A stretch of 63,412 nucleotides of DNA, counting the filler, from Reticulomyxa filosa (Eukaryota; Protista; Foraminifera), in NCBI GenBank assembly GCA_000512085.1. It is 19 parts of 19 records of this genome, joined end to end, with 100 filler letters (N's around TTAATTAATTAA, not from the genome) between each part and the next. Parts side by side here need not be neighbours in the genome. Positions count along the whole stretch, not along the records: positions 18,964 to 23,336 come from ASPP01045337.1; 18 more parts are not named here. One strand, 5' to 3'. Below, piece after piece: positions 6,977 to 23,336 of the stretch; position 1 is the first letter of the stretch, and each line of letters begins with the position of its first letter. The position numbers and the translations under genes are program-made. The notes beneath the pieces were generated by a model. That model made no database searches. It was not told where the DNA came from and saw only the letters and a program-made list of their open reading frames with translations.

Positions 6977-9402
6977 CTATTCTATTTTGATGCAGGCGCT
7001 CAGCAACTTCTCTGCAGTCTCTACATTCAAAAAATTACTGACAACTTTGTCCAGTACATCAGATAAGACGGAGATCTTCTCGGTTAGATATATTTGAGCA
7101 CACCAATGTATCAAATGATCATTTTCCGTTTCTATGAGTTTTGATGACAACATGCGTATAAACGATTAGAAAAACAGAGTATGAAATGGCTTCATAACAT
7201 ACCTAATAGCCTTTTAAATAAAAAGGCAAAACAAGATACTTGTTGAACAAATTGAACGGATGTTCTATCGACTTCGGAAACAGGATTGTTGCTTTCGCTG
7301 TTTGCTTTCGTTTTCCAAGTAACAATTGTGAGTAACTTTGCAATGCTTTGGAAAAGATCGAGCGAATATGAAACGTGTTCTTTTTCAGTGGATGAATCTA
7401 TTGGCTTAATTTTCTCAAATCCATATTCGATGATGTAACCACATAATCTCAACACATAGGTTCTCACAGACATGTCAAACATCAACCAAATAGCAACACG
7501 GTGTGCAGCAGATATGGCAACGATAGAATCGATCAATATGCGAAACGACTCGACTAATAACACACGATTTTTTTCGTCAAATAATTTGTCTCGAATAAGT
7601 AATTGCGACACCATCTTTACTACATTGCCTTGTTCTTGTGATGATATTTGCGACCAGGTCACTGGAAGTGTCTCGAATAATTTCTGAGTCATGCATGCAC
7701 ACAATATAAGTACTTATTATTATTATTAAACAAGAGCATTGCGTCAGAGGTCATCGACAAACAAACAAGCAAAAAATTGAATATGTACATATTATACATA
7801 TATATTTAACAAAGACAATTTGAAATAAAGCACCTGCAAAAGACAATTTCGTTGAAGAGCATCGTCCTTGCATCGCGTTACAAGTGAGACCAGATTCATA
7901 AATTCATTCATATTATTGTTGTTATTGTTATTGTTATTGTAATCGTTAATATTGTGGTTTTTGTTTGTATTGTTAGATAGCTCAAAGGAATTGTCGCCTT
8001 TTTTCAATTCTGGTATTGTTTCGCGAAGATTGGAAAGTACTATGTAATTGAACGTACGTATACGATTATGTGAATATGTTGTAATTATTGTGTCGATCCC
8101 CTTTTTTTTTCCCCCTCCGGTAATTGATTATGATGATTGATTCAAAAACGAGCCACAGAGCAAACACAAATGACAACAAAGAATAAAATACCAAATTCAT
8201 CGTCACATAGCCTTTTTAGCAGACGTTTGCGCTGGTCATTGTTATTTGTACACTTGAATATCTGTCCTACCACTTGAATCAATCGTCGACGATACTGTGG
8301 ACTTTCTTTCATTTCTGGATGAAAAATCTGTTATCAAGAAACGGACATCAAAAGTGTTGTTTGCCACACGCAGGCGGTAAGATTCAATATTGGTTAACGC
8401 AGAGTCGATTTAGAGTAGATATGCGTGTATTCAGATATTGTATTTACGTATTGCAACCGATGATCACTCTTTTTTTTTTTTTTTTTTTTTAATGTTCATA
8501 CAATGTCGATTGCTGACTTTGTACATACCGTTTCAACCAAAGTAGTCAACATCATATCTTGCACTGCAACTCCACACTTTATAACAACTCGAGACCTTGT
8601 GATGAGTGTTATACACACATAACATATCATTGCATATGAGAAGTTGTATGTCCCTTGTGCCATTCAATCGATTGTTTCAAAAAAAAAAAAAAGAAAGAAA
8701 ATACGTGATATGAATCCACATCCACGCCGATGCTGGTGTATTGTCGGTTTGACAATGACAAGGTTTGAGCAAAGAATGAAGCAAGAATTGCAGCACGAAT
8801 TGGATCACATCCGAGTTGGAAGGATTGCTGGAGCAGCAAAGCAATAAAAACTCGGAAAATATTTTGACAGCGTAAACAACAAATCGTTGATGGTAAACAT
8901 GGAGACGGCTAAAGTCTTGTTCATTGCCAAAATCCAATGTACGATCAAGAACAGTTGCATCCTTCATGTCACTGTTATTGTTATTGTCATCTTCTAATAC
9001 TGTGAGCAGTTTTTTCACCCACTCCAAAGTCATTTCGTTACTGCTAACCTCACCCATTTGCGTGCTCTTTCTTTGGATTGTGATCGATTCCAGTATTTTC
9101 AGATACAACAATACCGCTCGTCTCATCGACGTGACTGCATCATTGTCCGCGTGGTTGTCATCCATCCTCCTTGCTCCTTCCCACTCGTCGTCCACATCGT
9201 CTCTCGTTTTGGAAAATGCCATCAATCGCACTTTTTCAATACACGAAGTCAGCCCATCCAATCCTATTTTGTGGTTCATCAGTACATGCAGCATTCTTTC
9301 AACCCCAGTGTTGTAATTTTTTTTAACCTCCACCGCGTTCATTGCGTGAATACATAATCCGTCCATTTCACAATCGGGATACACATAACGCGGAAATTTC
9401 CA

Positions 9403-18963: not shown

Positions 18964-20108
18964 CAGAAAAAAGTATTGGAGACGTCAAAAGAAACTATAT
19001 TCGGTAAACTGGACAAAATATATATGGTAAATATCAAAATATTTTTACTTTTTTAAACAAATTTTTAAAAAAATAGACAAGTCAAGAAGCAGATTTAATA
19101 ATAGAACATTGGATTCGATCTTCAACGAATAAAAGAGGATGGATTTATGAATTTAACAAAATAATTGCAAAATATGTTAAAATTATCAACCACATTTGAT
19201 ATATTCATATAATCACATGTTGATATGTTAACATACTAACATAGGCCAAAGGTTTTAAATTGTCAAGAGTATTAAAAAGAGGATCTTACCATATTGACAA
19301 GCTAGCATTTTCGGCAGATGGTCACAAGTTTTATTTATTAGCAGAAGATGGGACATTTGAAATATGGGACATTGCATTAGGTAAGAAAATTCAAAATTTC
19401 AACAAAAGTAATGAAATGCAAGATTTTATAGTATTTTCACCAGATGGAAGTACTTTTGTATCGAATACAAACAATGGAATGCAATCATGGGATATAGAGT
19501 CAGGAAAAAAAGTGATGCTATTTGAAGGAATTATACGATATCATGAGGAAATACAATTTTCTTCAGATGGTAAATATATTGCTGTAATTTTACATGGTGA
19601 TGATATTAGATTCTGGGATGTGGATTCTGGAAAACAAATTCAAAGACTAGAAAAAAAAAATTATGTAATTGATAAGAAATATTTACCAAATAGACAAATA
19701 GCTGTATCATTAACTACCACAACAATTAGTTTATGGGATATGAAATTGGATAAAAAAGTGAAAGAAATATACATGGATCATGTCAAAAAAACAAAATTAT
19801 CTCCAGATGGTAGATTTCTTGCAGTTTTTCCATTCTATTATTCGATTATAATATGTGACTTGGAAAAAAATGTATTACAAAGAATAGAGGGAAGATATTT
19901 AAGACCTGTAATAGATTGGCAATATTTTCCAAATTGTCAAACAATTTTGATTGGATTTAATAATGGTTCACTTTTATTGTGGGATATACAATCAGAATAT
20001 GAAACAAAGATATTAGATAGACACGCTGATATAACAACAATGGCTATTTCTCCTGATGGTAATACATTCTTAGTTTCTTCTGGCGATACAATTGAAATTT
20101 GGGAATGA
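18964..20108 (+). CDS. WD40-repeat protein of a lineage-expanded family, with the N-terminal IIEHWIR module
   Basis: Exons <18964-19026, 19077-19175 and 19245-20108; repeats of FSxDG...IWD. Confidence 0.88.
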
Positions 20109-23100
20109 TTGATGTGTTGTCGATGTTTCTTTTTAACAAATAAAAGAGAGGAAGCAAAGAAGGAATTACTTCACAATAAAACACATTTGTATCAAAATAA
20201 AATTGAATCCATTTTTTATCAATTTGTTTGATATTTGTAATAAGTTTGGGAAGCTTTGTTTGATAAAATTGACAAAAATTGATTCGTTCAGTTGAATTAA
20301 AAGATAATTGAAAATAATTTTGATCGGTTGATTCATCACGACGATAAAATGCTCCATTTTGAATGGAATAAATGTTTGCTTTTGCAACAATAGCTTGTTC
20401 CACTGCTATTCCATTATACACTTCATTATATTCAACATTCAATTGTTTCGAAAGTATTTTCATTAATTCTGTATGGCTGGGAATTTTTAATAAAGGCTTA
20501 TTTAATGTGTTTCCGCCTTTCACTTTGTTTGCACTTACACTCACTATGTTCTCATTGTTACTCTTTTCTTCATTGATGGCCGCGTTGTAATTTCTTCTTT
20601 TGAACACAAAGCTCTTGTATTCCTGGTCTCTAAACCATTCATAAATTACACTACCCAAACGAATTCGATATCCAACATTGTGACTTCTCAAATAGCAATT
20701 TTGTGCATCCACTTAATTGGACGATGCGGCCAATATTTTACAATTGACAATGTATTGCCCTCACGAGGAGGAAGAGATGACAATTTATTATTATCACTAC
20801 AATACAAATGTGTCATACTCTCATTGCTATCACTATTTCTTAACTTAGTTGCATTTTTAATATATTCTTTCAACCATTCTTTGTTCTTATCAATACTTGA
20901 ATCATCTAGTTTGAAATAAGCAACTAAATAGGCTTGAATCCGTACTCATTCTTTGGATGAATTGTATTTAAAGATTGGCATAATTGTGTTACAATAACAT
21001 TCAATCAATTTTCAAAAGACAAATTATTTATTCAATTGCTTGTTTGGTTCTAATCGTCTTTGATCAACACAAGTGTGCACTCTTTATTTTCTTGACTTAC
21101 ATCTCGCCTTGAAAAAGTTCGCCAATTTGTTTGATGGAGATTGGATAGGGGAACAATATCGATCCATCTACAATATTGAGAGTACAATATCTTCATTTGT
21201 CTTTCACATTGAAGCTATTCGCTGTTGTTGATGTGATTCATTATGGAAGAGTCACTACATTAATTTTCTGGACATCATTTGCACATCGACTTTTTTTTTT
21301 GCAGTTTTGTGTGATGTTCTCTCCGGGACAGTAGTATTTTCTTCACATTTTTATACTTGCCTTCTTCTTCATTTACAGTTCCACCACCTGCACCGTCCGT
21401 CGATTTAACATATTCTAGTTTTTGTAAAAACAAAAACAACAAACAGCAAATTAATTCAAATTGTTTAAAAGAAGTACAAAAATAATAAATATTTTTTTTA
21501 ATCATTTCATACCAATCTTACTTAATAACGACAACAATAGTTTTTTTACATTGAAAAAAAAACAATTCAGTCACCAATCAAATTGCAATAATATTTTCCA
21601 CCAAATCAACACGAAAGGTCATAACAACTGTATTTTGTAAATGTTTCCATGTGTCTTTGGCGTGTTGATATCGGTGGATCATACAACACAGGCATAAATA
21701 CATGAAAAAGGCGGCGACAGACATTTGATCAAATTAGGCACATTGATGAATTCGAGTACGTTGAATGAAAGTAGTGCGTGCTAATCCAAGTGTTGCTGTG
21801 TGATTGCAAGCACATGACAATTCATTATCACTGGTTTCTTTTTATAAACATTATCCATAATCATTCATAGTTTTGATAAAACGAATACCAAAACTTTTAA
21901 GGGATTATTGTGTCGACTCTCTTTCATTCACATTTTCTCCTTGCTTTTCTTGATGTGTTTGTATTTCTTGCACTATTCATTATCAGTGTCGTATTTTTTA
22001 AGATAGTCCACTAATACTATTGATTCTTTCTTTTTTTTTCCATTCCCTTAATCTAATCTTCTTCTTATCTTTCTTCCTCTTCCTCTTTCTTGCATTCCAG
22101 CCTAAGGCAATCGCTCTACAATGAAATGATCCATGTCTACATTGTTTTGGTTAAGACACATCACAAAAGCTGAAAATATGACAAAAGTAACATATACCTT
22201 CATTCTTTGTATCTCGTATTAATATTTACCACAGCTTCATCAATTTCACTTTCTTTGATTGTATAATATTGATTGTATTTATATTGTCTTGTTATTTTTG
22301 ATAATACATTGTTAATAATATCCACGCTTTCACTTGAACAACATTTTTTGTTGTTTCAAATCTGTATCCACAGGAATAGCACATCAATTGGAGATTATCA
22401 AAGAAAGATAAACTATTCACTCCAGCAAATACTTGTCCTAAATTCACTTCGACTGATTAATATTTTTCTCCTTTTGATTGCGAGATTTGAACGTGTGGGA
22501 CTTGGTCTTATACTGTTTCAAAAGCATTAAAACTTTGTCATATTTGTTCAAACTTTCGCTAGTATGTTTGATTTTCGAAATAGATAAAACTGAACTCCTT
22601 GGATAAATGTGGTGCAATCGATAGTCAATTTGAAAATGGTTTCAAATATATAACAATATGATCTCAACGACGTTGCAAATGTACTATAGCTGTAATTTGC
22701 ATTGGTAATTGTTTGGAAGTGCAACTTGTTGTTCACATTTGCATCTATATTCGACAAAAGAACATCCAAATGAATTCTTGGACCAATGGGGTAAATAGTA
22801 CGACTGTTTTCACTGGCGATCTGTTGATTTTTTTTAGTCAATATTTGTTCCAGGAAAATTTTTTATATTTAGTGTATCGTTCGATAGGTTACCAAAAGCA
22901 CATTTTGAAATTCGGTCAAAATTACACGTCCATAAAAGCCACATTTAAACAAGATACATCTATACTATATATTACATGGTCAATGCTGCGATCAAGTGTG
23001 AGACAATGAAATAGCAGCGAATTGAATTCATATAATAAAAAGGCTGATACTATCTGCTGCATTGTTGCTATTGAACCCTTTGCATTGTTCACTTCTTGCC

Positions 23101-23336
23101 AGTATCACACTTCAGTATCTTCACCACATAAATAAAAAATTAGTCTCGAATTGATAGTCGATTGTCGTACTCAAGTTCTTTACTAAAAAAGAGTTTGGTA
23201 CACTTAATGTTGTTTATTCTTTGCTTGTTTTTCTTCGTTCTCTATAATGTTATACGTATGTTTTCACACCAATTTTTTTAACAAACACAAAAAAAAAATT
23301 TACTTAACTAATGTTATCATCACTCACAGGATCACC
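20044..23336 (-). pseudogene. Degraded coding-like region
   Basis: One 222-aa ORF plus many short ORF pieces broken by stops and frameshifts; family not recognised. Confidence 0.35.

What the first reader, a model, noticed from the sequence alone, without database searches (positions are those of the whole stretch)
19077..19175. Exon-encoded ~33-aa module shared by a WD40 protein (N-terminal) and a Kelch protein (C-terminal): candidate lineage-specific adaptor system
Seen: the phase 0-0 exon at 19077-19175 encodes TSQEADLIIEHWIRSSTNKRGWIYEFNKIIAKY. It aligns without gaps to the Kelch gene's terminal exon peptide RDENEIVVIEHWFRTCKISFLWVRDLNDVINSF (41417-41310, minus strand). Conserved positions are IEHWxR, the W eight residues after R, E/D, N, I and the terminal aromatic. 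Neither exon is in the ORF track. Established: F-box, SOCS/BC-box and PRANC motifs are short helical modules fused to either end of repeat-type substrate-binding domains to recruit cullin ligases. Inference: this is an analogous, possibly unnamed, exon-shuffled docking module that links expanded propeller families to one shared partner, such as an E3 scaffold.
Basis: partly seen in the sequence, partly recalled or inferred. Interest (0 to 1): 0.85.

Follow-up and report, generated by a model that had tools for sequence, protein, structure and literature searches.

The report
Foraminiferal helical module joining propeller domains
The 99-base exon is real and encodes a 33-residue helix-loop-helix motif, so far unnamed and seen only in the amoeboid protist Reticulomyxa filosa. 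It sits between, before or after beta-propeller domains in at least 75 of its proteins, and what it does is still unknown.

Summary
The piece is a complete 4,373-bp Reticulomyxa filosa contig. Exon 19077-19175 is real, has an AG acceptor and a GT donor, is phase 0-0, and is already part of a partial GenBank WD40 protein.

A profile of the peptide, run against 1.84 billion representative proteins, gave 35 hits at E below 0.001. One is a false positive. All 30 real hits whose source was looked up are R. filosa, and 5 hits were not looked up.

Among 223 fetched proteins, 75 carry the motif. W12 and W22 are invariant, and G21, I23, F26 and Y33 are conserved in at least 90%. The architectures are:
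- Kelch-module-WD40: 26
- other N-terminus-module-WD40: 32
- Kelch-module-short tail: about 15

The window's gene belongs to a subfamily with an N/Y/R-rich upstream exon, so here the module is internal, not N-terminal. In all 15 genomic copies examined, the module begins exactly at a phase-0 acceptor.

AlphaFold predicts helix-loop-helix at low confidence (pLDDT about 50-63), not docked on either propeller. No Pfam or PDB sequence match was found, including F-box, SOCS box, LisH and IQ.

The E3-adaptor role is untested. My best guess is an autonomous protein-contact element, possibly a LisH-like pairing motif.

The parts
18965..19003 (+). 3' end of the upstream coding exon (13 codons ending ...KKLYS), cut off by the contig edge. 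It is the tail of an N/Y/R-rich low-complexity region.
   Evidence: Reading frame 2 ends in LYS directly before GTAAAC at 19004. Diverged relatives P0122 and P0123 have the same '...SLYS|T' junction into the module. In paralogue locus L005 this frame is a 148-codon reading frame from a Met. It is 33% identical to the P0122 N-terminus, E = 9e-11. GenBank's model P0002 instead uses a donor at 19027 that is absent from the paralogues.
19004..19076 (+). Intron 1 (73 nt, GT...AG) with an A-rich tract before the acceptor.
   Evidence: Sequence. The acceptor context (A-run followed by tag, cag or aag) is the same in all 15 module copies examined.
19077..19175 (+). Module exon: 99 nt, 33 codons, phase 0-0. 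Predicted fold is helix 1, then a loop around the conserved G-W, then helix 2.
   Evidence: Translation. Family profile hits. Conservation. AlphaFold models of relatives P0003 and P0150 give helix-loop-helix at pLDDT 49-63.
19176..19244 (+). Intron 2 (69 nt, GT...AG).
   Evidence: Sequence. A GT follows the terminal Tyr codon directly in 9 of 15 copies, and two codons later in a tenth.
19245..20108 (+). WD40 beta-propeller exon (287 codons plus stop), uninterrupted.
   Evidence: Translation. Pfam WD40 and beta-propeller families. 69-75% identity to the full C-termini of paralogues P0001 and P0003. The AlphaFold model of P0003:44-366 matches solved WD40 propellers at Z 24-25. GenBank's P0002 splices out of this frame near its end, which the paralogues do not support.

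Best explanation
Shown. Exon 19077-19175 is a genuine coding exon of a Reticulomyxa filosa gene. The best model of that gene is an N/Y/R-rich low-complexity region, then a 33-aa module, then a WD40 propeller. The module belongs to a large family found so far only in R. filosa: at least 75 proteins among those fetched. It is encoded by its own phase-0 exon. It lies directly in front of a WD40 propeller, directly behind a Kelch-like propeller, or between the two.

Inferred. The module is an autonomous two-helix hairpin whose two conserved hydrophobic stripes are buried by contact with another protein surface. The mechanism I think most likely is pairing of module-bearing proteins with each other. 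That would form a four-helix bundle, as LisH motifs do next to WD40 and Kelch propellers, and would assemble Kelch and WD40 binding domains into dimers or mixed pairs. The descriptive part is about 0.9 likely. The 'autonomous contact element' part is about 0.55. The specific pairing mechanism is about 0.3.
For: Exon and gene:
- Translation, splice sites and the in-frame WD40 exon.
- GenBank's own protein contains the exon.

Family:
- 35 representative proteins at E below 0.001 in an exhaustive profile search.
- 75 of 223 fetched proteins carry the module.
- All 30 real hits whose source was looked up are R. filosa.

Exon structure: all 15 genomic copies start right after an AG, at the same aligned residue. 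In 10 of 15 a GT follows within two codons of the terminal Tyr.

Independence from either propeller:
- 32 occurrences have WD40 but no Kelch, and about 15 have Kelch but no WD40.
- In 10 Kelch proteins that stop 0-73 residues after the module (seven within 5), the module is at least as conserved as the Kelch domain. Mean pairwise identity is 0.71 against 0.65, and it is higher in 38 of 45 pairs.
- Across the family the module (0.45) is conserved like the propellers (0.52 and 0.42). The linker before it is less conserved (0.33).

Fold:
- Two AlphaFold runs on different subfamilies both give helix-loop-helix.
- The propellers score above 90 pLDDT while the module scores 49-63 and is not placed with confidence.
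- Fourteen conserved hydrophobic positions form one stripe on each helix.
Against: - No experiment or model shows binding.
- The one complex job (two copies of the module) gave no verdict and counts neither way.
- The low pLDDT may only reflect a shallow alignment of 40-64 paralogues.
- The LisH resemblance is recalled from memory. The Pfam LisH model matched none of 72 copies, and no profile-profile comparison could be run.
- No RNA data could be found, so splicing rests on comparative evidence alone.
- Some Kelch-module 'ends' may be annotation artefacts. One has a GTAAGT one base after the Tyr codon.
Confidence: 0.4

Rival explanations
1. Passive structural element. The hairpin is a cap or rigid connector that packs on its own protein's propeller, or simply spaces two propellers. 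It has no outside partner.
For: 58 of 76 occurrences sit immediately before the first strand of a WD40 propeller, at a fixed distance. In one subfamily a long charged single helix runs straight into helix 1. The module's tree follows its neighbours.
Against: AlphaFold does not dock the module on either propeller (pLDDT 49-63). The module is kept, and is as conserved as the Kelch domain, in proteins that lack WD40. It also occurs in proteins that lack Kelch, so neither propeller is required.
Confidence: 0.25
2. The module is a docking box that plugs many Kelch and WD40 receptors into one ubiquitin-ligase scaffold. It would be analogous to the F-box with Skp1, the SOCS/BC box with Elongin C, or the helix-loop-helix by which WD40 receptors such as DDB2 and CSA bind DDB1.
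For: By established knowledge, a helix-loop-helix directly N-terminal to a WD40 propeller is the arrangement DDB1-binding receptors use. The same Kelch family is also fused to a U-box in P0218, which links it loosely to ubiquitination. In the family, 44% of the WD-dipeptide motifs end in R or K, against 9% in a mostly bacterial control. 13 of 43 proteins have a strict DWD box.
Against: No copy matches F-box, F-box-like or SOCS-box models. None of 72 has a BC-box or LPxE pattern. A DWD-box rate of 13 of 43 is about the general eukaryotic background (my own knowledge), and the window's own WD40 has none. Kelch-caspase, Kelch-TPR and Kelch-U-box relatives lack the module. No scaffold protein was tested.
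Confidence: 0.1
3. An amphipathic motif that binds something other than a protein scaffold or a second module. Candidates are an IQ-like site for a calmodulin-type light chain, or a Trp-rich helix that sits on membranes or microtubules in this transport-rich cell.
For: 48 of 72 copies fit a relaxed IQ spacing (hydrophobic, basic at +5, basic at +10, aromatic at +13), and 22 of these also have the Q. The motif has two invariant Trp residues and conserved basic residues at positions 14, 19, 28 and 32.
Against: No copy fits the strict IQ pattern or the Pfam IQ model. The near-invariant Gly and the predicted loop break the single long helix that an IQ site needs.
Confidence: 0.1

Closest known systems
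LisH motif (Pfam PF08513), as in LIS1, TBL1 and muskelin
   Same: About 33 residues and two helices, with a Gly-aromatic pair at the turn. It is found beside WD40 propellers (LIS1, TBL1) and Kelch propellers (muskelin). It works by pairing into a four-helix bundle. This comparison comes from my own knowledge, not from a tool.
   Different: No Pfam LisH match in any of 72 copies. The module has two invariant Trp residues and a longer stretch between the aromatic of helix 1 and the Gly. Dimerisation is not shown. The module can also be C-terminal.
Helix-loop-helix / H-box of DDB1-CUL4 substrate receptors (DDB2, CSA and other DCAFs)
   Same: A short helix-loop-helix immediately N-terminal to a seven-bladed WD40 propeller. 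It is poorly ordered without its partner (my own knowledge; fold prediction).
   Different: No sequence relation was tested or seen. The module also follows Kelch propellers and ends some proteins. The window's WD40 has no DWD box.
F-box (PF00646, PF12937) and SOCS/BC box (PF07525)
   Same: Short helical modules fused to WD40, Kelch or other repeat domains in expanded families.
   Different: Tested and not met: no HMM match, and no LPxE or BC-box pattern in 72 copies. The module lies between domains, or C-terminal to Kelch, rather than at the usual F-box position.
N-terminal helix of G-protein beta subunits
   Same: A helical extension in front of a WD40 propeller that exists to bind a small helical partner (G gamma). 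G-beta chains align with the model from residue 27 on, which includes helix 2.
   Different: The match is driven by the propeller (Z about 24), which is generic for WD40. There is no sequence similarity in the helices.

Membership tests
WD40 beta-propeller (downstream exon 19245-20108) | Matches to the Pfam WD40 repeat and propeller models, and a seven-bladed propeller fold | tested here: met
   PF00400 at 48.5 bits (cut-off 27) plus many propeller families. The AlphaFold model of close paralogue P0003 aligns to solved WD40 propellers at Z 24-25 over 275-300 residues.
F-box / F-box-like | Match to PF00646 or PF12937, and the LPxE core | tested here: not met
   None of 72 module copies matched, although the scan was set to list hits up to E = 10. 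HMMER's filters drop most matches above E of about 0.1. LPxE is present in 0 of 72.
SOCS box / BC box | Match to PF07525, and the BC-box pattern [STP]Lxxx[CSA]xxx[AILV] | tested here: not met
   No Pfam match. The pattern is present in 0 of 72.
LisH | Match to PF08513, and a homodimeric four-helix bundle | tested here: inconclusive
   No hmmscan match in 72 copies. A profile-profile comparison could not be run because no LisH alignment was available. The dimer job gave no verdict. The resemblance in length, turn and domain context is from memory only.
IQ calmodulin-binding motif | Match to PF00612, and the pattern [FILV]Qxxx[RK]Gxxx[RK]xx[FILVWY] | tested here: not met
   No Pfam match. The strict pattern is present in 0 of 72, and a relaxed pattern without the Gly in 22 of 72.
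DCAF (DDB1-CUL4 associated WD40 receptors) | A DWD box ending in WDx[RK] within the propeller, and binding to DDB1 through an N-terminal helix-loop-helix | tested here: inconclusive
   A strict DWD box occurs in 13 of 43 family members but in none of the window's repeats. DDB1 binding is not testable with these tools.
Kelch-like propeller (upstream domain in relatives, not in this window) | Matches to Pfam Kelch models, and a propeller fold | tested here: met
   P0150 and P0134 hit Kelch families upstream of the module. AlphaFold gives residues 15-321 of P0150 as an all-beta domain, mostly at pLDDT above 90. The window's own upstream region is instead N/Y/R-rich.

The most novel reading that the evidence does not exclude
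The module is a common plug. Through it, well over a hundred Kelch and WD40 receptors of this giant syncytial cell either pair with each other combinatorially or dock onto one shared scaffold such as DDB1-CUL4. That would be a foraminifer-specific counterpart of the F-box, SOCS-box or LisH systems, built on a single shuffled exon.
Probability: 0.2. Interest if true: 0.75.

Novelty: new variant of a known kind. Interest (0 to 1): 0.45.

Why it matters
Short helical boxes such as F-box, SOCS box, BTB and LisH organise large families of propeller-type binding proteins in animals, plants and fungi. Rhizaria are barely explored in this respect.

This module is a conserved, exon-defined motif with no match in Pfam. 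It marks a very large family of Kelch, WD40 and Kelch-WD40 proteins in Reticulomyxa filosa, and relatives of that family are fused to caspase, U-box and TPR domains.

If the module turns out to be a pairing or docking element, it would explain how this expansion is wired together. It would also give a bait for finding the partner.

At the least, it deserves a domain-family entry. It also gives a reliable landmark (a phase-0 exon of 99 nt) for repairing the many inconsistent gene models in this fragmented genome.

Tried and rejected
- **RNA evidence.** The look-up of sequencing runs listed no run for 18964-20300, so read laying was not used and splicing could not be confirmed with reads.
- **Word-index search.** A search restricted to the module region of P0003 found only five near-identical paralogues. 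It is too insensitive for a 33-aa motif, and the exhaustive profile search was what worked.
- **PDB sequence searches.** The narrow and the broad module profiles gave only chance-level hits, E = 0.2 to 1.7. An eight-residue run in yippee-like 5 is coincidence.
- **ESM Atlas.** The feature search gave no usable hit.
- **Complex prediction.** Two copies of the module gave no answer: score 0.02 against a mark of 0.32, controls not run, my alignment not used. This is no evidence either way.
- **Fold search.** The search with the P0003 model is dominated by the propeller and says nothing specific about the hairpin.
- **Literature.** No held paper combines Reticulomyxa with Kelch. The genome paper is not held. 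Other papers only use an R. filosa caspase as an outgroup.
- **P0138.** This JGI metagenome protein was rejected as a family member. It matches only profile positions 3-21, within a repeated low-complexity unit.
- **Spliced model.** I did not build or search a joined model of the window's gene. The exons were searched separately by reference, and GenBank's own proteins P0002 and P0003 were used where a joined context was needed.

Full report
**What the piece is.** Places 18964-23336 are one complete contig of the Reticulomyxa filosa assembly GCA_000512085.1 (record ASPP01045337.1, 4,373 bp). It is AT-rich, 27-35% G+C.

**The observation.**
- AG lies at 19075-19076, after a run of A. GT lies at 19176-19177.
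- After a 69-nt intron ending in AG at 19243-19244, the frame continues at 19245. It runs as an uninterrupted 287-codon WD40 reading frame to the stop at 20106-20108.
- GenBank's partial protein for this contig (P0002) already contains the exon with these boundaries. The exon is therefore annotated. What is not annotated is that it is a module.

**A better gene model.**
- GenBank's models of the window's gene and its close paralogues (P0001, P0002, P0003, P0005, P0007) disagree with each other upstream of the module.
- Reading frame 2 of the window (18965-19003) ends in ...KKLYS directly before GTAAAC at 19004.
- Diverged relatives P0122 and P0123 join '...SLYS' to the module in the same way.
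- In paralogue locus L005 this frame is open for 148 codons from a Met. It is 33% identical to the N-terminus of P0122, E = 9e-11.
- The gene is therefore an N/Y/R-rich low-complexity region (cut off here by the contig edge), then the module, then WD40. The module is internal, not N-terminal.
- P0002 also leaves the WD40 frame near its end, which the paralogues do not support.
- I searched the exons separately by reference and did not build a joined model.

**How big the family is.**
- The single exon has no Pfam match.
- A profile of five close copies (A2), run against 1.84 billion representative proteins, found 35 proteins at E below 0.001.
- One of these, P0138, is a false positive from a metagenome. 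All 30 real hits whose source was looked up are R. filosa, and 5 hits were not looked up.
- A search with the Kelch half of one hit, P0150, brought in 72 more R. filosa proteins.
- A local HMM built from 35 copies then found the module in 75 of the 223 proteins held.
- Over 72 aligned copies, W12 and W22 are invariant. G21, I23, F26 and Y33 are conserved in at least 90%. R14 is present in 63 of 72 and K19 in 56 of 72. Hydrophobic residues recur at positions 5, 8, 9, 13, 16, 18, 20, 29 and 30.
- None of the 72 copies matches any Pfam family below the E of about 0.1 that HMMER's filters let through, although the scan was set to list hits up to E = 10. The broad profile has no meaningful PDB sequence match.

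**Where the module sits.**

| Architecture | Occurrences (of 76) |
|---|---|
| Kelch-like propeller, module, WD40 | 26 |
| Other or short N-terminus, module, WD40 | 32 |
| Kelch, module, tail of 0-8 residues | 11 |
| Kelch, module, tail of 9-60 residues | 4 |

- The 32 'other N-terminus' cases include the window's low-complexity type, one with a TRAF-type zinc finger (P0136) and one with a weak TPR match (P0146).
- The short tails are typically S-[KR]-x-x. In locus L003, two tandem Kelch genes end this way, and the next feature downstream is a convergent WD40 gene. These ends therefore look real. One of them has GTAAGT one base after the Tyr codon, which leaves some doubt.
- Kelch relatives fused to caspase, TPR or U-box domains lack the module and use other linkers.

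**Exon structure.**
- In all 15 genomic copies in the 11 loci held (about 12 are independent), profile position 1 follows an AG directly.
- In 9 of 15 a GT follows the terminal Tyr codon directly. In P0150's gene it comes two codons later, and the next exon starts at the equivalent residue.
- The module is thus a symmetrical 99-105-nt exon across subfamilies that share only about 40-50% identity in it.

**How it spread.**
- A tree of the 72 modules is poorly resolved because it has only 33 columns. It still groups copies by their upstream partner: 5 changes, against 15.7 in shuffles, a value as low in 0 of 200 shuffles.
- The downstream state (WD40 or end) needs 5 changes.
- Most copies therefore arose by duplication of whole genes, with a handful of gains or losses of a neighbour at the exon boundaries. 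Frequent shuffling is not supported.
- The window's copy and its closest paralogues are recent DNA-level duplicates. Their exons are 93-98% identical with no indels. Their introns are 76-95% identical with many indels.

**Is it autonomous?**
- Across the family, the module's mean pairwise identity is 0.45. That is comparable with the Kelch (0.52) and WD40 (0.42) domains and above the linker before it (0.33).
- In ten Kelch proteins with no WD40 after the module, its identity is 0.71, against 0.65 for their Kelch domains. It is higher in 38 of 45 pairs.
- The module is therefore under constraint with only Kelch beside it, and it also occurs with only WD40 beside it. This argues against a mere extension of either propeller.

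**Fold.**
- In the AlphaFold model of full-length P0150 (64-row alignment, mean pLDDT 90), the module is helix 362-382, loop 383-389 (around the conserved Gly-Trp) and helix 390-400. Its pLDDT is 51-59, and a long charged helix (331-359) precedes it.
- In the model of P0003:44-366, the window's close paralogue, the module is helix 5-21, a loop, then helix 26-40, at pLDDT 49-63.
- Both propellers are confident, and the hairpin is not placed with confidence on either.
- The propeller of P0003 matches solved WD40 proteins generically at Z 24-25.

**What it probably does.**
- Each helix carries one stripe of six conserved hydrophobic residues. A lone two-helix hairpin cannot bury these by itself.
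- Taken with the constraint in the absence of either propeller, I read the module as an autonomous contact element.
- The mechanism I favour, at about 0.3, is pairing between module-bearing proteins, as LisH motifs do beside WD40 and Kelch propellers. That comparison rests on memory and on domain context, not on a tool result. Pfam's LisH model does not match.
Its structural analogy is the helix-loop-helix of DDB1-binding WD40 receptors, and a U-box fusion exists in the Kelch family. Against it, no F-box, SOCS or BC-box signal exists. The DWD-box count is at background and is zero in the window's gene.
- A passive cap or spacer (0.25) and other ligands (0.1) are the remaining rivals.
- The single complex job gave no verdict.

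**Verdict.**
- It needs correcting on position (internal, and mostly between two propellers in one chain) and on the mode of spread.
- It is unproven on function.
- The finding is a new short domain family in one protist, not a new kind of system.

Noticed in passing
window 18964-20108; L005 1405-2959; L001; L002: GenBank models of this subfamily are inconsistent. P0002 uses an upstream donor (19027) that the paralogues lack, and it leaves the WD40 frame before its end. P0001 cuts the module in half although the full exon is intact at L005 1950-2048. P0003 and P0007 read the upstream exon in a different frame from the one conserved in P0122 and P0123.
   Followed up: yes
L005 1405-1848; P0122 1-176; P0123 53-222; window 18965-19003: The region upstream of the module in this subfamily is a 130-220-residue low-complexity stretch rich in N, Y and R (about 11-15% each). 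It has a conserved start of the form M-A-[SN]-W-x-x-[RK]-N-x-x-x-F. It looks like a disordered, possibly RNA-binding or condensate-type region.
   Followed up: partly
window 20044-21167 (-) and 22200-22820 (-): Two further genes are called on the minus strand (293 and 157 aa), with no Pfam hit on record. The 222-codon ORF at 20044-20712 has no Pfam match. It overlaps the last 65 bases of the convergent WD40 gene.
   Followed up: partly
P0177, P0199, P0200, P0212, P0219, P0222 (Kelch-caspase); P0211, P0214 (Kelch-TPR); P0218 (Kelch-U-box): The same Kelch-like N-terminal domain is fused to caspase, TPR or U-box domains instead of the module and WD40. Five of the six Kelch-caspase proteins (not P0212) share a different Trp-rich linker, of the form ...KW[MV]KWW..., between Kelch and caspase. 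The family looks like a sensor-plus-effector toolkit.
   Followed up: partly
P0150 322-366 and relatives (model m1061a55d8089): In one subfamily a long helix very rich in E, R and K (about 30 residues) links the Kelch propeller to the module. It resembles a stable single alpha-helix spacer.
   Followed up: no
L003 4001-6960: Two Kelch-module genes lie in tandem, 49% identical. A WD40 gene converges on them from the minus strand near position 7060-7150. This is local tandem amplification of the family.
   Followed up: partly
L010 6927-7025 (-), L010 5473-5574 (-), L008 1554-1655 (+): Additional module exons were found by six-frame search next to the genes that were fetched. The copy at L010 5473-5574 looks decayed: the Gly before the second Trp is Asn, the conserved Phe is Leu, and no GT follows. 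The genome therefore holds more copies than the protein set shows.
   Followed up: partly
WD40 domains of 43 module-bearing proteins: The repeat-closing motif ends in R or K (WD-hydrophobic-[RK]) in 44% of repeats, against 9% in the mostly bacterial WD40 hits. 13 of 43 proteins have a strict DWD box, and the window's own propeller has none.
   Followed up: partly
L005 252-653 (-): The gene next to paralogue P0001 has weak F-box and F-box-like Pfam hits on record. This is a hint that R. filosa may have conventional F-box proteins alongside this module.
   Followed up: no
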